This document shows positions 14,197 to 25,200 of a DNA stretch of 64,000 nucleotides, in pieces. The stretch's first letter is position 1; each line of letters starts with the position of its first letter. The position numbers were made by a program, and so were the translations under genes. Below the pieces are notes generated by a model. That model searched no databases and was not told the origin of the DNA. It saw only the letters and a program-made list of their open reading frames with translations. Origin of the DNA: Ruditapes philippinarum (taxonomy: Eukaryota). The stretch covers positions 62,001 through 126,000 of the forward strand of contig NW_026852705.1 in NCBI RefSeq assembly GCF_026571515.1, written 5' to 3'.

Positions 14197-15486
14197 ATGG
14201 ATTTAAAACCATCTGAAATATACTATTCACAAGACAGTATAAGCAAATGTTTTCGTAGGAAGTCATCCCACGGGACACAAACAATAGGTCAAACACTAGA
14301 TCAAGTTATTGCTGGTGACTGTTCGATAACTGACATACCTAAAATATCTATTTTGAAACTACCAGGGAACCACAATAAGTGGTTTTCTGATGACAATCGA
14401 CGACTTTGGGTATTTAAACAACTTGAACGGTTGGGTAATATAGATACTGTAAGAGTTAAATGCACTGTCTATAACTATAATCGACATAGTAAAAAAATAA
14501 CAACAAAGAATGGAGGTGTTTCAATTAAAATCCGAGGTGACGGTCAGCCCGGGGGAGCCGCGCACACATTGCCAGACAATTGTTACGATAAAAAAAAGGG
14601 AAACCTTGGAAAAGTAAAAAAAGAAAATGACGATCAACAGAAAATGATATCGGGCAACAGAGAAGTGCAGCAAGGATCATTTCCATCCTATATAAATAGT
14701 ACTAGCCAACCAACCGTGGGGTCATCGTGCGAAGACAAAGAACCATTGAAATCATCTGCACACCAAGAAAGTGCAGGTTTTTCAGAAAGTTTAAAAAAAA
14801 TGCACGTTTCAGACGGGGGAAAAGTATCATGTAAAAGCTCAGGCTCATCAAACAAGGATGACGTTGGTACAAATGTTGTCACTCTAAGTAATCGGTACCC
14901 TTTTAATACAAAATATGAAAATGATGCCGATACTGGATACGCAGTAACAGGAGAATATAAAGGGCCATACAAAGCCAGAGTTGGTCTGCTGACCAAAGTT
15001 GATACTATTTGTGAATCCAAGCCAACGACAAGACAATTAGAACCATCAAAATGCCAACACCATGAAAAACTTCGAGCTGAACGTCCCAATCCTACTTCTT
15101 CTTATCAGAAAACATTTGCGAACGAAGTGCAAACTGTTCCGTCGAAAACAGTTAAACACATCGCCTCCCACTATACTGCTTCTACTAAAGTGAAAACAAT
15201 AGAAGCACAACCACCTCGAATTCAACATACAGTTGCTGTATCTAAGAGTGCCGATGCAGTAAAGGATGAACGCAGTTTGTCCATAAAAGACATCTGTACT
15301 TCAGCGTTTGGTTCCAACAACTCCAGATCTATCCCAGTGGAAATAAGTCATAGAAAAAAGAGTCGTCAGTCGTACATCACGGAAGAACAAGTAGAACGAA
15401 ACATGAAACTATTGTTATTTCGCCAACGGTACAAGGAGTTACTACCAGAAACTTGGACTACATATTCTTGCAAAGCAAGTGATTAA
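14197..15486 (+). CDS. Intronless 429-aa ParB-like domain protein (paralog B)
   Basis: Open ORF colinear with 7065-8516; keeps YYSQDSI and DNRRLWVFK; lacks a 171-nt in-frame segment present in A. Confidence 0.85.
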   Translation: MDLKPSEIYYSQDSISKCFRRKSSHGTQTIGQTLDQVIAGDCSITDIPKISILKLPGNHNKWFSDDNRRLWVFKQLERLGNIDTVRVKCTVYNYNRHSKKITTKNGGVSIKIRGDGQPGGAAHTLPDNCYDKKKGNLGKVKKENDDQQKMISGNREVQQGSFPSYINSTSQPTVGSSCEDKEPLKSSAHQESAGFSESLKKMHVSDGGKVSCKSSGSSNKDDVGTNVVTLSNRYPFNTKYENDADTGYAVTGEYKGPYKARVGLLTKVDTICESKPTTRQLEPSKCQHHEKLRAERPNPTSSYQKTFANEVQTVPSKTVKHIASHYTASTKVKTIEAQPPRIQHTVAVSKSADAVKDERSLSIKDICTSAFGSNNSRSIPVEISHRKKSRQSYITEEQVERNMKLLLFRQRYKELLPETWTTYSCKASD

Positions 15487-17180
15487 ACTTGCCATATTTT
15501 AAGAAAATTATATTTATTCATTTTAGTAAAGAGTATAAAACATTTGAATGGTGTGTAATTTTTATTATTTATTGAATCAAAGATGCTTCTTATCAGTTGA
15601 GATGTCATGGATTTTCAAAGATTTACTACAGGACATATACATATGCTAGATTGCTTCAATGCCATCATTGTCATTGTGATATTTTTACTTAATTCTCATT
15701 TGTTTATATAAAGTTAGTCATAAGTACTAAAATAAAGTGATCTTAAACAATAAAATCGTTCATTGTTGAACATAGAAATGCAAACATAACTTAATATATG
15801 GGACTGGAAAATGTAATGATACATTTTGAGAAACCTTGCATAAAAATTGTGCAGCTGGAATGTACATTTTTGCGTTTTCTTTTTCAAGAAAGGCATGATA
15901 TCAATTCTATATATATAACAGATGACGTAACTTTTGTGACTCATGGCACTTAATTCATGGAAACATAATATATTTAATATTATTGAATCACGCATCGAAT
16001 TTTACCGTGGTAATGAACATCTTTTTACCACCTAAACCTAGACTTACTTTACGGCATCTCAGAAAGGATATATTAGCGTTCCACTCTAAATTTGTTTTAG
16101 TTCCGGCAGACAAGGCGGCCAATAACATAATCATTGTATGACGTATTCATTATATAAATGTTTTACAAAATGAACTTAACAGCACCAATACTTATTCTAA
16201 AACCGTTCTTTCTGAAAGAGATATTGTGAACAGTCATATTTCTAGTATTTCTAACTTTAAAGTACGTGTTGATGAGAAAGAGCTTAAACTTCCTATCATG
16301 TACTGGATTCCAAAATTACATAAACATCCATATAAAGCCCGCTTTATTGCTAATTCTTTATCTTGTACTACCAGTAATCTTTCTATTTTATTGACTTCTT
16401 GTCTTACTGCCATCAAGACACATGTAATTAGATACTGTGAAACTGTTTATGAAAATACGGGCAAAAATCTGTTTTGGTCTATTAAAAATTCAACTGAAAT
16501 TTTAGATAAGTTTAAAGTTAAGAATTATCAAGCTTCATCTGTAAGTACTTACGATTTCTCTACCTTATATACAACATTGCCGCATAATCTTATAAATGAT
16601 AAATTAGTATCTTTAATTCAAAAAACATTTGCAAGAGAACAGGTCACGTTTCTTGCTTGCAATTCAAAGAAGGCTTTCTTTACCAATGTTATCATTAAAC
16701 AATATACAATGTGGACCTGTGACGAAGTTTGTAAAGCACTTTCTTTTTTATTAGATAACATTTTTGTCAGGTTTGGTAATACAGTTTTCAAACAGGTAAT
16801 AGGCATTCCAATGGGAACTAATTGTGCCCCCCTGATAGCTGATTTATTTCTTTATTGCTATGAGAGGGATTTTATGTTAAGTCTTTCCCCTACTTCGCAT
16901 CAGGAAATTATACATGCATTTAACAACACTTCCCGCTACCTAGATGATATTTTTAACATGAATAATCCTTATTTCGATCAATTGGTTTCTAAAATATATC
17001 CCAGTGAACTTAAATTGAATAAAACTAACTCTTCAGACGTTATTACATCTTTTTTAGATTTAAACATTTCTATCATTAACAATACTATAGTAACTAAAAT
17101 CTACGATAAAAGAGATGATTTTGATTTTAATATTGTTAACTATCCACATTTAGATGGAGATGTACCTCATGCTACATCAT

Positions 17181-19912
17181 CACCGTAGGGAACGTGTTAC
17201 AGTATCGCGTTTTTCGGTTACAGTATAGAATTTTCAAGATGGAGGATTATTTGTGGGAAGAGAGGTAGGTGATTTTTATTCAGGTCCATACTACTAGTAG
17301 TGTAGTTTCTAAAAGATGTTTTTGTGCTTTGCTTGTAAGGAACAGAATCCGGTATCTAGTCATATATTTCTTTAGACCCTGCACCGCAGATTTATCTCTT
17401 TATGCTCTCATAAATGTGCGGATTTGACGGTTTAAAAATTTGAATCGAGAGAACAACGCATTTTTCTCCCATTCCGACATTATTTAAGCATGTCTAGATA
17501 AAGTAAATCTACAAAACGTTAGTCCTTTATGTTTAGAAACGTTTATAAACGTGTATAAAACGTTTTACCAGTTGAACCTATTTTCCTGTTGGTAAAATGC
17601 GTTTGAAAAAATAAACAATGTTACAGTATAGAGCGAGGTTAATTTTGAATGGTTACAGCATAGACCTAGCGACTTTGATCCAATTTTGTTACAGTTTATA
17701 CCCAGATTTCGGTTACAGTTTAGATACTTGCCAAATTTCAAACAAAGTTCGTGTATCCATTATTTTTATGAAATAACTCATACCTTTCTATTTAATACAT
17801 TCTTGAAAGGTTGTATTACTTTTTTTCTTCAGCAGAAAAGTGATAGTTTGCTATTTTTCTTACTTTAAGTTTCAGATTGAGACTTTTTGCAGAATAAGTA
17901 ATGTCCTAAGTAAGGACTGTTTTCACGACAACAACAGTAACTTTTATCGAATTGTAATGAGAGAAGAAAGATTATTGCTTGATTTCATTACACATTATAA
18001 TAATGCCTATTAGTAATAAAATAGAGAAAAAAGAATCCTTAACAGAAGTCCAACACGGAAAACATGAAAATGTTGCAGGCTCAGTTTGACTAAACCTGTT
18101 CATGGACGGTAGTGGTAACTGCAAGCTACCATTCACGCCTCCTAGCACCGATTTCAGCAGAATTCACATTATATATGAACTTGTACACTTCAGATTTTTT
18201 AACATCTGTGGATGTGTTCATATGGCGGTTATCATGGAACCTTCAATGTGACACGTTATTGCCATTCTATGAAAAGCGGCATATTACCCCCAGGTTAAAA
18301 ATTGCGTGTGCCATAAACGAGAATACAATGAGTGAAACTAAACAAAATGAAATTTTGAGAGGGGATCGGCGGTTATGAAGCCTGCATACCATAGATAAGC
18401 TGTCAAAAGACACAATTAACAATCAGGCAATACCCTAAGAATGATTAAACAGTATTTAAGTGAGCAATACTGCAACCTTAAATTCTATTTTAAGTTGGAA
18501 TTTCCATCTACCATAATGTATTTTGTAAGTATTTAAAAGGGTTTATGAACATTTTCAATTTTGTTGTGTTGGAATTTCTTTAGGGATTCTGTTTAACTCT
18601 ATTTTGTTACGTTTGGCTTTCTTGGATTTTAAGTTTCAACGACACTGAGGTCATGTGAAAACATTCCTGCTTTAGTGTAAAGAAAGACCCCAGATACCCT
18701 TTGTGAAACATTTCAGACACGAGCGCCTGACTAGAACCACCGACCTTCCGTAAATTAGCTTGATAGATTCCTCACATACAAAGAATCCAAAGTCATGATT
18801 GGATTTCAACTACAGCAGTAAATGAAAGATGATTTGAAGTCGACGGCCTTATCCCGACTCTGCCACTATTATGTACCTCCATCACTAGAGAAGATATTGT
18901 AATTGTCTGACCTTAATTTATACTCTATAACTTTCAATATTATTTTCTTTTTCAGAAACATGAAAACTGCTATACAGGATGTCTGAAATAAAAAAAACGA
19001 CTTTTAATTTTATAATGACAAAATAATCGTAACTTCAACAAAGAAGCATTCGAAATGACGCCATGATCATGATTTGATTTGAATGTTTTTGGTTCGAGAT
19101 GAGAAGGGTCTTTAAACATTGGCTTTTTTCAAAATCTATGTTTTGGGTTTTCGTATCCCCGATTGCAACCGAAACCATTTGAACAACTTAATTGGTAGAA
19201 AGTCATGTAAATTTCATCACATTTAGTCAAGTAGTTATACTGAGCGGATGAGATTGCACACACATGTGTACGACAGACGGCCGAAAAGCCATCGTGCCAA
19301 TAAGCTCACAGAGATTTAAAAGTCTATGTAACATTCATACATTTTACCTAGTATAATTATATAGAAAATATCGAAGTCTAAACTGTAACCGAAATCTGGG
19401 TAGAAACTGTAACAAAATTGGATCAAAGTCGCTAGGTCTATGCTGTAACCCTGCACAAATTATCTCGCTCTATACTGTAACATTGTTTATTTTTTCAAAC
19501 GCATTTTACCAACAGGAAAATAGGTTCAACTGGTCATTTACTTTTATAAACGTTTCCTAACATAAAGGACTAACGTTTTGCAGATTTACTTTTTCTAGGC
19601 ATGCATAAATAATGTCGAAATTGCAGAAAAATGCGTTGGTCTCTCGATTCAAATTTTCAAACTGTCAAATCTGCAAATTTATGAGACAATATAGCGATAA
19701 ATCTGCGGTGCAGGGTCTGAAGAAATATATGACTAGATACCGGATTCTGTTCCTAACAAGCAAAGCACAAAAACATCTTTTAGAAACTAAACTACTTGTA
19801 GTATGGACCGGAATAAAAATCACCTACCTCTCTTCCCAACAAATAATCCTCCATCTTTAAAATTCTATACTGTAACCGAAAAACGCGATACTGTAACACG
19901 TTCCCTACGGTG
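17181..19912. mobile_element. Non-autonomous DNA transposon, ~545-bp TIRs, CAC...GTG ends, 5-bp TSD ATCAT (Transib-like signature)
   Basis: Left end CACCGTAGGGAACGTGTTACAG is the reverse complement of the right end finishing at 19912; the inverted match spans ~17181-17724 and ~19377-19912; ATCAT at 17176-17180 and 19913-19917. Confidence 0.93.
18640..18870 (-). mobile_element. Degenerate SINE nested inside the TIR transposon
   Basis: agaaccaccgaccttccgtaa..agct.gatag..cctcacat matches the SINE at 10481-10590 and 39513-39775. Confidence 0.6.
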
Positions 19913-20342
19913 ATCATATGGGGTGTATATTTCTCAATTAATTAGATTTGCTAGGGCGTGAAGTCATGTTGATGATTTTAATGAACGCAATTTATTTATT
20001 ACTAACAAACTTCTTAAACAAGGTTATCGCTATCATAAATTGCGTAAATATTTTATTAAGATTTACCATCGTAATTCAGACTTAGTTTTAAAATTTAATT
20101 ATAATTTAAAAACTCTTTTACGACAAGGTTTTACCAAGCCTGACTTCTATGGAGATGTGGTTTACAAACTTCGTAGGATCATGGGTCATAGTAATTTTTC
20201 TGCCGTCTTCACTAAAATTATCAAACGGTTTATTAAAAGAGGTTATGACCCAATTATTTTAAGGCATACCGCATGCTTGGTGTTCAACCCTTTTACAGTT
20301 GGATGCTACGCTTTCCTCTTTTGATTACATCTGACGGACCAA

Positions 20343-20413
20343 GTGGGAGACTCTATGATGGACAGTTCTTAAAGCCCTTTGGGGACTGAATTGTCTTAAT
20401 GTTCGTCTTCTGC
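20343..20413 (+). promoter_or_regulatory. SECIS-like element (type II fold) overlapping the RT stop codon; 3' core degenerate
   Basis: ATGA 20355-58, 12 nt, AAA 20371-73. Helix II GACAGTTC/GAATTGTC, apical mini-stem CCC-TTT-GGG, helix I GTGGGAGAC/GTCTTCTGC. The 3' core reads TAAT (20397-400) instead of TGAT. Confidence 0.65.
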
Positions 20414-20626
20414 CTTGCTTCGTCGGGCCCTTGTAGGTAATTTTCTTGTTGCTCTGCCTTCCTTTAAGGCATCGAGTACTTTGGTAATGGTCATTAGGCA
20501 GTAACTTTTTCTACATATTTATATAATTTTGTATGTGTTTTATTTATTTCGTCTAATGTAACCATGACCATTGTTAGAATTTCACTTGGCGGGGATTCAT
20601 TTTATATACATTTTCGTGTGTCATTC

Positions 20627-20736
20627 AGGAACATTTTGGGGCTAAGAGTGAGGTTTGGCGCGCCTAAAACCGGTTTAAACTCCCAAGTGGTTTAACTACC
20701 ACTATCCGTTCCAAGGCGGTACCCCTTTGTGTTCCT
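20627..20736 (+). ncRNA. Twister-ribozyme-like fold (P5-type permutation) in the retroelement 3' region
   Basis: Closing stem AGGAACAT..GGGG/CCCC..GTGTTCCT; P2 GAGT/ACTC; L1 TAA and GAGG; P3 AGTGGT/ACCACT; P4 CCG/CGG with 8-nt loop TTCCAAGG; both pseudoknots can be paired. P1 is weak. Confidence 0.55.
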
Positions 20737-22292
20737 TCACGTGTTTTTCTTGTCTGTATTGTTACTTGTTTTTGGATGTTTACATGTTTTGTTATGTCTG
20801 TCTTGTTGGATTGTCGTTGACGGTAGGTATTTTCTCCCCCCCCCTTCCATTTTTAACCCCTCCCCCACCTTTTCACCCGTACAGTCCTTTTCCCTTTAAT
20901 TCCCTTATGGGCCTGTTTTTGTTTATATTATTTCACATTACATGTCCCGCTCCTTTCGCCCTTGTGTCCACTCCAGGTACTTGTTTGGTGCCTTCTGGGT
21001 GTCCTTCTTGGGTGTGTCCGGGGGCGGCGTCCAGTGAACGTTGCCTTTGCCTTGTTGATCTTTATTCTTGTTATTTCTTATCTATGTACATAAACGGACA
21101 TTTTATTTTTTCCTTGTTAAGATAGCATTTCATAAAGTTTGTGTTATCAAGTGTATGCAATGTAGGCCCTACTTTTTTCATGTTAAGTAATATTTGTGTG
21201 TGTGTGGGGGGGGGGAGATACCAGACTTACTTTTTTCTCTATGCCTCTTCTAAGAATTTTTATATTTATATTTTTAACTATTTTTATTCGTATTGGACAT
21301 TGTTATAATAATTATATGCAACAATGCATTAGAAGGCAGTGTTACAATGTTTGACTTACTCGTACATTCGGATTATTATAGATATTATCTGATTTAGTTT
21401 TAAAATAAGACACAATACTAAGAGGTTTAGATGTCCTAAAATCACCAAAATTTAAACAAATAATTGGTCCAATTTATAATTTCTGTGTATCATACTAATG
21501 ACTCCTTGCTGGAAATTCTAACTTTATAATCGTTTAGATATAGACCAATTTTTTGCCCTAGTAAAAACGAGAAGGTCTAGATCTAACGTTGATTTTAAAA
21601 AAAAAGCTCTTGTAATCGTGATTTTACAGAACCATTTATCATTTTTAATCTGATATTGATTAACAGTAAATAAAATTAATATATTTATAAAAGTAATATT
21701 AAATGTGTGCGGATTTTTGTGTGGTACATACACACATAAAATGTTCATGCAGATACATGTATAATGAAAATGTTTATCAACATAATGAAAAATGTCAACA
21801 AAGGTCGTATACACTTTTAGGCTTCAAGTGAGCCGGGTTGAAATTTGAAAAAATGGCCCATGGAGTCAATTTTCCAAGGTGTCAAATTTAATGTTACACT
21901 GGCAGTCAGTTTTATTAAACAAAATACAATGTATGTTTGTTTAAAAGTTGTCAAAATTGAGAGAGAAAAACTTTATTATGCACTATAATGTATGTGTTTT
22001 ATTTCTAACATAAAGTTTTGAATCAATAATTGGATATGTACAAGGTTTTATTTTGGTTCCATCGTGTACAATTATCAAGCATTGAAAACAATGTGATATT
22101 TGCTATCTTCCTGCAAATAAATTCGATGATTTATATCAATGTATAAAAGATAAATCAACATATTGAATGGACCACAGACTTATTTACCTTTAGATAATAC
22201 TTTAAAACTTCTTCAACTATGTCTTGGTTGAAAAAAGTAGTAGTAACAATTATACATAAAAGTATAAAGTAGCTTCTTGAACGTTTTATTTT

Positions 22293-25200
22293 TTAAGAAA
22301 CCACAACAATTTTTAGTCTATGAAGGTTTCCACTGTTAGGAGTTGTGCTAATGAGAATCCTTTGTGCATCTTCTGGTGTGAAGGGATTGTCTGGATGGTT
22401 GTAGTGCACAATCAGATTATCGTTTAGGTACATCTGAAGATGATTAGAAATAAATTAAATAATTTGTCAAATCTATTTCAGCGATATCATTTAGATGTAC
22501 ATGTATAAAGATTATGTTTTTTATAAAATATATATAAATTTCTACCAGCCTTTTTATCATTATATATACAAATAGACATAAATTGTCATTAAAATTTAAT
22601 TGTAAAAGTTATTGACTATTGTCATACAAATATTACATAAGATTCAAGATTCAAGATTACATTCATGCCAGTCTCAATAGTGTAAATTCAGAAATGATCC
22701 TTGAAAATTAAGTACATATGTACAAGTAAATGTCCATTGTCTGAAAATCTGCTACATGTGAAAAACGCAAGGCTAGCTTCCTTTTCGATAATTAATTGTT
22801 TGCTCCTCTTTTACAAAAGTAATAATATACATGTATGAAAAAAGAAAAGAAAATTTCACACGAGATGGTCATCTTTATCATAGAAAAGCTTTATAATAAA
22901 AAAAGCTTTCGAAATATATTAACTGAAAGCTTTACTGTATTTTCAAATTGTAAAAGTTAACTGTTCATATTCTAAACTTTTGTCTTCTAGAAAAATGTAG
23001 AATAAAGACCAGATATACAGTAATACATTTCGACTTATACAACACACGGTTTGTAAAAAGTGGCTGATAAAGTACAATTTCATATAGTTTAGATGATTCA
23101 TAAGTTTCGTTTCAATATCTTGTACATTAAGACACTGCTGCCGTTTGGAATATCGATATCATATAAAATTATGATATTGACAATTTTCAACATGATAAAA
23201 CAATCAAAATCACATAATGTATGGTTTACATACGTCAGTGCCATTTTCCAGTGGTCTGATGGTCAGCTTGTGAATAGTGTCAACTGACAGCACAATATTA
23301 GCTCTAACAAAGTCCTTCTGCCAGACGCCATCAATCTTATGGTCAAGTTTCAATTCCTGGATACTAATATCTATCATAACTTTAAGGGCAACATTACCAC
23401 CATCCATTGAAAGAAGCACATATATCCTAGAAATTGAAAGACTTTGAAATATTTTGAATATTTTCTTCATATAACCTAATCTTACAATGAGCGTTAATGA
23501 ATTGGTGTTCATAAAAGACTACAGAAATCAGTATCATTTATCTTAAATAAATGGCCTAAACTAAATACTCATAATAACAAGGACAGAAATATTTTCCCAC
23601 TTTTGCGAGAGCAAAAATTTCATAATAAACAATTAAGAAATTTTATTTAAATAGTTATCACAGTGGGCTAATATATATAAAATAGTCGAGTTTTCAAATT
23701 GATGAGCCTACATCAATTTCATTGTAACATTTTAATGGGATATTTTGAACTACAAAGAACGTTCGATTCTTTGGAAACAGTCGTAGCAACTTCGTGTGTC
23801 TTGCAAAAATGCGTCCCTAAAAACAACACTCCGTCAAAATTAACCAATAAACATTCAGTAAGTCATTATTATCATTTCCGTTTGTATTTCAACTTTATAA
23901 TTACAACTGGACATAATCTGATTGTAGGATTACAAATCATTGACATAAAATCAAAATATGATTTTACGAGTGACAAGATAAACCGTCATGCATATATGTC
24001 ATACAGGTCGACTAGTGCATATAGAGACATACTGGCAATGGTATAACGTCATTGTTTTGCAGCACAAAATATCCATACATACTTACTTAATATCTGTACT
24101 AGGAAATGAAAACGATACGTCTACTGAGCTACCAACACCCAACAGCCCAGGTAGTTCCGACTTATATGAACTTGTATTTACCAGCATCTAGAAATGAAAG
24201 TGATATAATTATGGTTTGTGCAGTGGTATTTACGAAACCAATTTAAAGAAAAAGAAAAGGAGCATACATCCGCCTTTGGACTATGCTCATATTCAATAAC
24301 ATTGCAAACGATAACATAGCAATTTTTGTTTATATGCTGTGTTAATGGCGAATAAGAAGTATAGATTTTGTTAAACAGTCTTCAAAATTATTCACATCGT
24401 ATTATCGTTGTTTTAGTGGTGACAAAGATCTTAAATCTTTTATTATTACAGGTAGGTTATAAATTTGGTTGGTATATTTATCAATATGCAAATGCAAATA
24501 AGAACAATTTCCATCTACCGACTGGAGTTACTAATGAGTAATTTTGGACTCTCTTCTCATATAATTTGACCAACCAATTGCATTAAAGTTTAATTAATGA
24601 AATAAACACAAAATAACAAAGTGTTAAAAAACTGACGAAACATTGCCAATTAGTATACGTGTAAGTAAAAACTGCCTAAAACAAAAGTTACGCTAAGAAA
24701 GAACATGAAATAAAGAAATTCACTAAAAACAATACTATCACGAAAAAGTTGATGTAGATCTGTGATATTAACACATTGGTGAGATCAACGCGAGTCGGAT
24801 TTGCAATATGAAAGAGAGAAATAAGTAACCTCAATGTAGTTTAACGTATCTTTATCAATTATTTTTTTATTAGCATGTTAGAATGGAAATAGATATTAAT
24901 TTATCTTGCATTATAGTATAAAAATGCAAGACTTTCGTGATTATATTCTTGCGCATTTGAACTCCAACTGCATTATTCTACAAGTCAACAATACACTCAA
25001 AATTGATATATCTATTTCCTAAACAAAGCACCTTATCGACAAAAATAAAACATCAATTTTAAATTAAAGATACCAGCCTGAATTAATAACATAAGAAAGC
25101 AGATTTTTCGAACAGCATCGTATATAATATCTGAATTGGAAAACTGAAAATCAAATTATTGAAAAAGAAAAAAAAACATAGAAAAAAATAATTCTTACCG

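What the first reader, a model, noticed from the sequence alone, without database searches (positions are those of the whole stretch)
16022..20372. Retroelement reverse transcriptase that appears to be a selenoprotein
Seen: after excising the nested transposon, ~540 codons of RT frame contain only TGA interruptions, never TAA or TAG. Two fall where this RT family has Cys (DKAANNIIIV*R at 16139; QLIRFARA*S at 19959), and a third (20322) lies 16 codons before the terminal TAA. The ORF track misses this because it stops at each TGA. Knowledge (from memory): Naiad Penelope-like elements of clams and spiders were reported to encode multiple selenocysteines (Craig et al. 2021), so the phenomenon is rare but not new; its function is unknown. 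Inference: selenium-dependent UGA recoding could gate retrotransposition. This copy is dead (5' truncated, one frameshift, split).
Basis: partly seen in the sequence, partly recalled or inferred. Interest (0 to 1): 0.8.

Follow-up and report, generated by a model that had tools for sequence, protein, structure and literature searches.

The report
Dead copy of selenocysteine-coding Naiad retrotransposon

Summary
The three TGAs differ. TGA 16139, eight residues after the DKA motif, is the family state (13 of 18 sister copies, none TGC/TGT; 23 of 24 in a second family 80% identical). This is the site Craig et al. 2021 reported as Sec in all Sec-Naiads. TGA 19959 is private to this copy (0 of 28 sisters; the 25-mer occurs once in the genome). 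TGA 20322 is family-wide but is most likely the real stop: it lies 5 nt before the SECIS hairpin, and a subfamily of at least 32 copies carries TAA there. Codons after the UGA are under strong purifying selection (dN/dS 0.08), and the genome has tRNA-Sec. So this is a dead copy of a Sec-coding Naiad family, a known kind. Not in the parts of the paper I read: TGA at the CxC-motif cysteines, a Ser/Sec polymorphism (305 against 95 copies), and a SECIS core reading UAAU instead of UGAU in 1003 of 1006 copies. The scan noted the same family on other DNA of this genome (s1-807814, s1-812924).

The parts
15946..17180 (+). 5'-truncated Naiad element, first part: end of the linker and RT fingers/palm, up to the nested insertion
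   Evidence: Similarity to 20 same-family copies starts at 15946. Weak RVT_1 hit, E 0.0042. 80% nt identity to family 2.
16027..16027 (+).
   Evidence: Alignment with L002, L027 and L005 shows one extra base in the window only.
16109..16117 (+). DKA motif, diagnostic for Naiads
   Evidence: Translation. Motif as described in PMC8557442.
16139..16141 (+). Family-fixed TGA, the Sec codon eight residues after DKA
   Evidence: TGA in 13 of 18 sisters with no TGC/TGT, and in 23 of 24 family-2 copies. Relatives P0001, P0053 and P0079 have Cys here. L073 and L074 have TGA plus a SECIS.
17176..17180 (.). Target-site duplication ATCAT, left copy (right copy at 19913-19917)
   Evidence: Read from the sequence.
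17181..19912 (.). Nested non-autonomous DNA transposon with terminal inverted repeats of about 550 bp
   Evidence: Inverted repeats I1-I3. No ORF of 100 aa or more. Left arm repeated in the genome, 1239 first-look candidates, the 40 scored all matching from base 1.
19918..20321 (+). RT thumb / C-terminal part of the ORF
   Evidence: Translation. dN/dS 0.11 against family 2.
19959..19961 (+). Private TGA, a nonsense mutation of a conserved Cys codon
   Evidence: TGC in 24 of 28 sisters and TGA in 0 of 28. TGT in 8 of 9 family-2 copies. The 25-mer with TGA occurs once in 1.4 Gb, in the window itself.
20322..20324 (+). Family-wide TGA, the probable true stop codon
   Evidence: TGA in 17 of 24 sisters, TAA in 4. 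One subfamily has TAA in 32 of 36 exact matches. It lies 5 nt before the base of the hairpin. The paper describes the same arrangement for Naiad-Mmer.
20330..20427 (+). SECIS hairpin: Rfam core 20347-20409, AUGA 20355-20358, apical AAA 20371-20373 overlapping TAA 20370-20372, 3' core UAAU 20397-20400 with the unusual A at 20398
   Evidence: SECIS_1 at 35.6 bits, cut-off 35. MFE -40.3 kcal/mol, z -4.05. Covariation. 96.9% identity between the families against 79-82% in the flanks. UAAU in 1003 of 1006 copies.
20373..21076 (+). 3' tail of the element, the pseudo-LTR segment
   Evidence: Many copies end at 21075-21076. In L061 the same segment also lies upstream of the ORF.

Best explanation
Window 15946-21076 is a dead copy of a Naiad-type Penelope-like retrotransposon of a bivalve. 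It is 5'-truncated, frameshifted at 16027, and split by a nested DNA transposon.

Full-length relatives encode one ORF of about 1,070 codons. It holds an N-terminal GIY-YIG endonuclease with zinc fingers, a CxC linker, and a telomerase-like RT. In the family, UGA replaces conserved cysteine codons:
- before the GIY-YIG motif;
- at the first Cys of the CCHH finger;
- at the first CxC Cys, and in the window's own subfamily at the second too;
- eight residues after DKA, which is 16139 in the window.

These UGAs are read as selenocysteine under the direction of a SECIS hairpin. The hairpin starts 5 nt after the family's terminal UGA (20322), which serves as the stop. The step from UGA to Sec is inferred, not shown.

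The TGA at 19959 arose in this copy after insertion and has no function. Because the element carries its own SECIS, any Cys or Ser codon that mutates to TGA becomes a Sec codon at once. This would explain why Sec sites accumulate in subfamilies.
For: - **Family-level TGA conservation.** See (figures in the summary and parts). No TGC/TGT was seen at the DKA+8 site in 20 family-1 and 24 family-2 copies.
- **Open frame.** A family-2 copy has 941 codons without TAA/TAG and with five in-frame TGA.
- **Selection downstream of the UGA.** Window against family 2: 511 codons, dS 1.21, dN 0.095, dN/dS 0.078. For the 345 codons right after TGA 16139, dN/dS is 0.083.
- **SECIS.** It reaches Rfam's cut-off. 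Across four lineages 94.4% of cells are paired, 11 of 15 pairs change on both sides, and 0 of 500 shuffles reach this. The hairpin is 96.9% identical between the families; the CDS is 81.8% and the tail 78.9%.
- **UGA and SECIS go together in other species.** L073 and L074 have TGA at DKA+8 and a SECIS of 42 bits. L077, L079, L082 and L084 have Cys there, include their 3' ends, and have no SECIS hit.
- **Sec machinery.** tRNA-Sec is present at two loci, 78.8 bits against a cut-off of 47.
- **RT fold.** AF2 model with pLDDT 85.8. The best PDB matches are telomerase RTs, E 5.8e-9.
- **Published precedent.** The paper places UGA at exactly this DKA+8 site and describes the same SECIS/stop arrangement.
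- **Stop function of 20322.** A subfamily of at least 32 copies carries TAA there.
Against: - The SECIS core lacks the A.G pair: the 3' side reads UAAU, not UGAU, in 1003 of 1006 copies.
- SECISearch3 discards candidates with 'no GA-AG in the core' (PMC3753652).
- The tandem G.A/A.G is reported as needed for SBP2 binding (PMC1874613).
- The Rfam score is only 0.6 bit above the cut-off.
- No direct evidence of Sec insertion exists.
- Transcription is not shown. Only 41 reads of 7.37 million read in the RNA run X24 lie on the element, and RNA-library contigs could come from DNA carry-over.
- 0 of 10 sampled family-2 copies has the whole ORF in one frame.
- Pfam does not recognise the GIY-YIG domain in the pieces searched.
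Confidence: 0.82

Rival explanations
1. All three TGAs in this copy are Sec codons of a selenoprotein RT.
For: All three are TGA, and no TAA/TAG interrupts 536 codons. The 19959 site is Cys in the family.
Against: The TGA at 19959 is found in 0 of 28 sisters and nowhere else in the genome. The codon at 20322 is TAA in 32 of 36 copies of one subfamily. It also lies 5 nt from the hairpin, which the paper considers too close for efficient Sec insertion.
Confidence: 0.03
2. The TGAs are plain nonsense mutations of a long-dead family, and the hairpin resembles a SECIS by chance.
For: The window copy is dead. The SECIS score is borderline and its core is non-canonical.
Against: The same TGAs sit at the same Cys sites in two families with dS 1.2 and dN/dS 0.08. 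No other stops occur in 941 codons. Family-2 copies are 96.8-99.7% identical to each other. Covariation and local conservation support the hairpin. Other species pair the same TGA with a canonical SECIS.
Confidence: 0.03
3. The UGAs are read through, but not as Sec or not via this hairpin. Options are near-cognate readthrough, Cys insertion, or mobilisation in trans by another Naiad. On this view the A.A core has disabled the SECIS.
For: The core departs from the published requirement for SBP2 binding.
Against: Four or five successive UGAs make unaided readthrough very inefficient (inference). The hairpin, with its A, is shared by both families and is far more conserved than its flanks. A k-turn with A at this 2n position still folds and binds an L7Ae-family protein (PMC3985660, abstract as listed).
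Confidence: 0.12

Closest known systems
Naiad-Mmer (Mercenaria mercenaria) selenoprotein-coding Naiad, Craig et al. 2021 (PMC8557442; passages read)
   Same: UGA at the Cys before GIY-YIG, at the first CCHH Cys and eight residues after DKA. The SECIS overlaps the first non-UGA stop, with a UGA just upstream that probably acts as the stop. The host is a clam.
   Different: The nearest named protein, from M. mercenaria, sits in a cluster only 78% identical to family 2, so this is another species or family. Here there is a further UGA at the first CxC cysteine, and at the second in the window's subfamily. The SECIS core reads UAAU, whereas the paper reports grade A SECISearch3 elements; that program discards cores without GA-AG.
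Naiad_Scon (Sinonovacula constricta), same paper
   Same: Four UGAs, one of them at a weakly constrained residue in RT6(D). Family 2 here has TGA at a Ser codon in the same region in 305 of 400 exact matches.
   Different: The paper places the Scon SECIS 1-21 bp downstream of a UAA/UAG stop. Here it overlaps the TAA and follows a terminal UGA. No CxC UGA is reported for Scon.
Selenoprotein P, which decodes many UGAs processively
   Same: Several UGA codons in one ORF are decoded with 3' SECIS help. This resemblance is recalled knowledge plus the paper's discussion.
   Different: SelP is a host gene with two SECIS elements. Here a mobile element carries a single hairpin that overlaps the ORF end.
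Kt-23 of Thelohania solenopsae, a k-turn with A at the 2n position (PMC3985660; abstract as listed)
   Same: Adenine replaces the usual guanine of the A.G pair, as at window 20398, and the RNA is still bound by an L7Ae-family protein.
   Different: It is a ribosomal k-turn, not a SECIS. Binding by SBP2 was not tested there or here.

Membership tests
Naiad clade of Penelope-like elements | DKG motif modified to DKA | tested here: met
   DKA at 16109-16117. The criterion comes from PMC8557442.
Naiad clade of Penelope-like elements | CxC motif in the linker between EN and RT | tested here: met
   The motif is lost from the truncated window copy. It is present in full-length relatives as TGA-GAC-TGC (22 of 23 family-2 copies) or TGA-GAC-TGA (8 of 17 family-1 copies).
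Naiad clade of Penelope-like elements | N-terminal GIY-YIG endonuclease with CX2-5CxxC and CCHH fingers | tested here: inconclusive
   The motifs can be read in L062, L066 and L067: C-x4-C-x2-C, then FVY...YVGQT...REH...YQH. Pfam gives no GIY-YIG hit on the pieces between the UGAs.
Naiad clade of Penelope-like elements | RT related to telomerase RT; insertion-in-fingers domain (IFD) | tested here: inconclusive
   The best PDB matches of the AF2 model are telomerase RTs, E 5.8e-9. The IFD itself was not delimited.
Naiad clade of Penelope-like elements | Pseudo-LTR / partial tandem structure and frequent 5' truncation | tested here: met
   The tail segment is repeated upstream of the ORF in L061. 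L066 and L067 each hold two SECIS copies about 4.25 kb apart. Many copies are 5'-truncated.
Naiad clade of Penelope-like elements | No canonical hammerhead ribozyme | tested here: met
   No hammerhead family appears in the Rfam scans of the window (gathering threshold, E up to 10 on 15000-23000).
Eukaryotic selenoprotein gene | In-frame UGA conserved at a site where homologues have Cys | tested here: met
Eukaryotic selenoprotein gene | Coding constraint continues downstream of the UGA | tested here: met
   dN/dS 0.083 over the 345 codons after 16139.
Eukaryotic selenoprotein gene | Sec machinery in the genome | tested here: met
   tRNA-Sec at two loci, 78.8 bits. SBP2 and eEFSec were not searched.
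Eukaryotic selenoprotein gene | Sec actually inserted (75Se labelling, mass spectrometry) | not testable with these tools
   No such data were available.
Eukaryotic SECIS element (Rfam RF00031) | Stem-loop with helix I, internal loop, helix II and apical AAR at the right spacing | tested here: met
   35.6 bits against a cut-off of 35. Apical AAA is present. Covariation.
Eukaryotic SECIS element (Rfam RF00031) | Core quartet with tandem G.A/A.G (UGAN / KGAW) | tested here: not met
   The 5' side is AUGA, but the 3' side is UAAU in 1003 of 1006 copies. Relatives L073-L076 have GA. It works like a SECIS by position and context, but it is not a canonical member.

The most novel reading that the evidence does not exclude
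A SECIS whose kink-turn core has A.A in place of the supposedly indispensable A.G pair works in vivo in this clam. It drives decoding of four to five UGAs in a retrotransposon that has spread to over a thousand copies. Because the element carries its own SECIS, it keeps converting Cys and Ser codons to Sec:
- the first CxC Cys is TGA in both families;
- the second CxC Cys is TGA in the window's subfamily (9 exact copies against 6 with TGC);
- an RT6(D)-region Ser is TGA in 305 copies against 95.

The family would then be a natural mutagenesis series for SECIS core requirements and for the birth of Sec sites. Its thousand scattered hairpins would be raw material for new host selenoproteins.
Probability: 0.5. 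Interest if true: 0.7.

Novelty: new variant of a known kind. Interest (0 to 1): 0.5.

Why it matters
Selenoprotein-coding transposons are known from only four published families. This genome adds at least two more, and they show the process in motion. Sec sites are gained at further cysteines and at a serine, and both the older and the newer forms have amplified. The SECIS also breaks a rule that prediction programs use as a hard filter. If that hairpin works, selenoprotein searches that demand GA-AG would miss real elements. The requirement of SBP2 for the A.G pair would also be less strict in at least one animal lineage. For annotation, ORF callers that stop at TGA cut these elements into fragments. 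Many database 'proteins' of about 480 aa begin just after the DKA+8 UGA.

Tried and rejected
- **Pfam.** Searches on the RT and EN pieces and on three database relatives gave only a weak RVT_1 hit and noise.
- **PDB by sequence.** A profile search gave nothing useful. The fold search did.
- **Genome contigs, first scan.** The scan with a single protein found no relative. The scan with an alignment found 20 loci.
- **Intron idea.** I took a gap of about 64 bp in L007 for a possible spliced intron. Family-2 copies read through that stretch in frame, so it is a deletion of about 64 bp in L007 (exact length not measured).
- **Alternative SECIS register.** I looked by eye for a register that would use the GA of 'CUGAAU' as the 3' core. 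No helix II forms in that register.
- **Subfamily with TGA at 19959.** L005 has GGA there, which suggested one. The exact 25-mer is unique to the window.
- **Expression.**
  - X22 is labelled RNA, but its reads break at GATC sites on both strands equally. It looks like a proximity-ligation DNA library (my inference), so I do not count it.
  - X24 gave 41 reads.
  - X15 and X18 are contigs of RNA libraries and cannot exclude DNA.
- **Organism.** Names were coded, so the species stays unknown to me.
- In one search the locus L006 was filed under family 2 by a short high-identity match. It belongs to family 1, and the counts in this report are corrected for that.
- **First pair count.** One search had helix I one column out of register. 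One search is the corrected count.
Full report
**What is in the window.**

- Codons from 16022 run to 17180 with a single stop, TGA at 16139, in the context DKAANNIIIV*R.
- At 17181 a foreign element begins. It has terminal inverted repeats of about 550 bp (arms 17176-17724 and 19377-19917, 90-96% complementary). It is flanked by a 5-bp duplication, ATCAT at 17176-17180 and 19913-19917.
- With the nested element and one duplicate removed, the frame continues without a shift. It reads ...HATS-Y-GVYISQLIRFARA*SHV..., with TGA at 19959 and 20322 and TAA at 20370.
- In frame there are three TGA and no TAA/TAG in 536 codons. The other two frames of the same DNA hold 26 and 53 stops (first piece) and 7 and 21 (second piece), most of them TAA or TAG. 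So the frame is far more open than chance allows.
It puts the 3' end at 21076, where many copies end.

**What kind of element it is.**

- Pfam gives only a weak RVT_1 match (E 0.0042, below the cut-off).
- A 481-residue piece of a related copy finds 3508 database proteins at E of 0.001 or less among the 8000 candidates scored, at 60-80% identity.
- An AlphaFold model built on 16 sequences (mean pLDDT 85.8) matches telomerase reverse transcriptases best (E 5.8e-9). Next come a defence-associated RT (DRT2) and group II intron RTs.
- Full-length relatives in the same genome carry the following upstream of the RT:
  - a C-x4-C-x2-C finger;
  - a GIY-YIG-like segment (FVY...YVGQT...REH...YQH);
  - a CxC linker;
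  - the DKA motif.
- They also repeat their tail upstream of the ORF.
- These are the diagnostic features of the Naiad clade of Penelope-like elements in Craig et al. 2021 (PMC8557442; passages read).
- Pfam did not recognise the endonuclease in the pieces between the UGAs. That feature therefore rests on motifs only.

**Sister copies and the three TGAs.** The genome (1.41 Gb, 15,874 contigs) holds many copies. The first look gave 1896 candidates for the RT part; 40 were scored and 30 fetched. I tallied codons at aligned positions without building any consensus.

- **Site 16139.** Of 18 sisters that cover it, 13 have TGA, 3 TGG, 1 TTA and 1 AGG. None has TGC or TGT.
- **Site 19959.** Of 28 sisters, 24 have TGC, 1 has TGC with an inserted T, 1 CGC, 1 GGA and 1 a deletion. 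None has TGA. The 25-mer with TGA occurs exactly once in the genome, in the window itself.
- **Site 20322.** Of 24 sisters, 17 have TGA, 4 TAA, 1 TTA, 1 TAT and 1 a gap.
- **The TAA at 20370.** It is TAA in all 25 sisters that cover it.

**A second family gives the decisive test.** A younger, more abundant family is about 80% identical in DNA to the window. Its copies are 96.8-99.7% identical to the reference copy L061. L061 has 941 codons free of TAA/TAG with TGA at five places: before the GIY-YIG motif, at the first Cys of the CCHH finger, at the first Cys of CxC, eight residues after DKA, and 16 codons before the TAA.

The table gives TGA counts in deduplicated loci (with L006 refiled to family 1). 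Family 2 here includes three copies of a group about 87% identical.

| Site | Family 1 | Family 2 |
|---|---|---|
| Cys before GIY-YIG | 7 of 8 | 21 of 22 |
| First CCHH Cys | 9 of 9 | 22 of 22 |
| First CxC Cys | 13 of 17 | 22 of 23 |
| DKA+8 | 13 of 20 | 23 of 24 |
| Terminal TGA | 17 of 24 | 7 of 8 |

At the 19959-equivalent site family 2 has TGT in 8 of 9 copies.

Between the window copy and L061, 511 aligned codons give dS 1.21, dN 0.095 and dN/dS 0.078. The 345 codons directly downstream of TGA 16139 give 0.083. Codons beyond the UGA were therefore translated and selected over a long period in both lineages. None of the ten family-2 copies I fetched has the whole ORF in one frame.

**The SECIS.**

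- Rfam finds one element at its curated threshold in the whole 64-kb window: SECIS_1 at 20347-20409 on the plus strand, 35.6 bits against a cut-off of 35.
- The minimum-energy fold extends helix I to 20330-20427 (-40.3 kcal/mol, z -4.05). The base of the hairpin thus lies 5 nt after the TGA at 20322.
- The TAA at 20370 overlaps the apical AAA.
- The hairpin is 96.9% identical between the two families. The coding sequence before it is 81.8% identical and the tail after it 78.9%. The conservation is local, not a shared 3' module.

**Other species.** A scan of public prokaryote genome contigs returned 20 loci. I take them for misbinned eukaryote DNA, but no call tested that.

- L073 and L074 (53% protein identity) have TGA at DKA+8 and a SECIS of 42 bits 31 nt after the match.
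- L076 has a SECIS of 39 bits. L075 has one of 29 bits, below the cut-off.
- L077, L079, L082 and L084 have Cys at DKA+8, include their 3' ends, and have no SECIS hit.
- 12 of the 20 loci were scanned.
- On an alignment of the window, L061 and L073-L076, the Rfam-type structure has 94.4% of cells paired. 11 of 15 pairs change on both sides, and 0 of 500 shuffles reach the observed values. Slid controls give 44-58% paired (six sequences, so the sample is small).

The genome also has tRNA-Sec at two loci (78.8 bits, cut-off 47).

**The third TGA is probably the stop.**

- The paper describes the same layout for the Mercenaria family: the SECIS overlaps the first non-UGA stop, and a UGA lies 7 bp upstream. 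It argues that a UGA so close is not efficiently recoded.
- Within one subfamily marked by a nearby diagnostic base, 32 of 36 exact matches carry TAA at this codon and 4 carry TGA. A source element with TAA there produced at least 32 copies, so translation beyond this codon is not needed.
- Relatives that lack this UGA end in a conserved tail (...FNCTPVGRxSDSMMxPT). The window's 15 codons after the UGA share only DSMM with it. DSMM is the coding image of the AUGA core.

**What departs from the published picture.**

1. **The SECIS core.**
   - The 3' side reads UAAU (20397-20400) where the relatives L073, L074, L076 and L075 have the canonical GA.
   - Of 1006 exact genomic matches to the 27-mer, 1003 have the A and 3 have G.
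   - SECISearch3 describes the core as UGAN/KGAW and discards candidates with 'no GA-AG in the core' (PMC3753652, passages).
   - The tandem G.A/A.G is stated to be needed for SBP2 binding (PMC1874613, passages).
   - A natural k-turn with adenine at the same position has been solved bound to L7Ae (PMC3985660, abstract as listed).
   - Both families share the A, stayed under selection and amplified afterwards, so I infer that the hairpin works. This is inference, and it is the main weakness of the selenoprotein reading for this genome.
2. **Extra UGAs.**
   - The paper reports three (Mmer) or four (Scon) UGAs and none in the CxC motif.
   - Here the first CxC cysteine is TGA in both families.
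   - In the window's closest relatives the second is TGA too: 8 TGA against 6 TGC among 17 family-1 loci, and 9 against 6 exact genomic matches.
3. **A Ser/Sec polymorphism.**
   - In family 2 a Ser codon in the RT6(D) region is TGA in 305 exact matches and TCA in 95.
   - This recalls the fourth UGA of Naiad_Scon.
   - Both states having many copies suggests that both were carried by active sources.

**Identity of the host.** The nearest named protein is from Mercenaria mercenaria. It sits in a cluster 78% identical to family 2, so the host is another bivalve. Run and organism names were coded.

**Expression.** Six RNA-labelled runs hold 17-43% of the sampled words of a family-2 copy. When reads were laid:

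- X24 gave 41 reads of 7.37 million read.
- X15 and X18 gave contigs over parts of the element, including a 1037-nt contig over the tail, the SECIS and the ORF end.
- X22 gave deep coverage that was equal on both strands, with loose ends at GATC sites. I read that as a DNA ligation library.

Transcription is therefore not shown.

**Verdict.** The window holds a dead, truncated, split copy of a Naiad retrotransposon family that very probably encodes a multi-Sec protein. The phenomenon was published in 2021. Other agents of this scan reached the same reading on other DNA of this genome (s1-807814, s1-812924, seen after my own tests). The family-level departures are the A.A core, the Sec codons in the CxC motif and the Ser/Sec polymorphism. 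They are what is worth following.

Noticed in passing
window 17181-19912: Nested non-autonomous DNA transposon with terminal inverted repeats of about 550 bp, ends reading CACCGTAGG..., and a 5-bp target duplication ATCAT. The family is abundant: 1239 first-look candidates, with the 40 scored at 95-97% identity. A 5-bp duplication with CAC... ends recalls Transib elements; that is from memory and was not tested.
   Followed up: partly
window 20627-20736: Another note of this scan (s1-803720) proposes a permuted twister-like ribozyme here. Between the two Naiad families this stretch is 79.1% identical, no more than its flanks (78.9% and 66.3%), unlike the SECIS hairpin at 96.9%.
   Followed up: partly
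L073-L092 (public 'bacterial' genome and MAG contigs): Twenty contigs filed under bacterial genomes or MAGs encode Naiad-type RTs. They include a 2-kb Paenibacillus contig, SUP05 and Thiodubiliella symbiont bins, and Bacteroidetes and WWE3 MAGs. I take them for host or eukaryote DNA binned with bacteria.
   Followed up: no
proteins P0043 and P0031: These database relatives have W at exactly the two positions where this family has TGA (first CxC Cys and DKA+8). P0037 and P0052 (1725 and 4545 member sequences) begin just after the DKA+8 position. This suggests another abundant Sec-type Naiad whose TGA was translated as W by a gene caller.
   Followed up: no
run X22 laid on L061:613-4300: A run labelled RNA-Seq gives coverage that is equal on both strands, with thousands of reads breaking at GATC sites. 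It behaves like a proximity-ligation DNA library.
   Followed up: no
L066 and L067: Each holds two SECIS copies in the same orientation about 4.25 kb apart, as expected for partial tandem (pseudo-LTR) Naiad insertions. The genome thus holds over a thousand SECIS-like hairpins (1006 exact 27-mers), which could matter for nearby host genes.
   Followed up: partly
window 21196-21216: A short (TG)n(G)n microsatellite lies 120 bp downstream of the element's 3' end. The insertion itself is not flanked by an obvious microsatellite, although Naiads are reported to prefer (TA)n.
   Followed up: no
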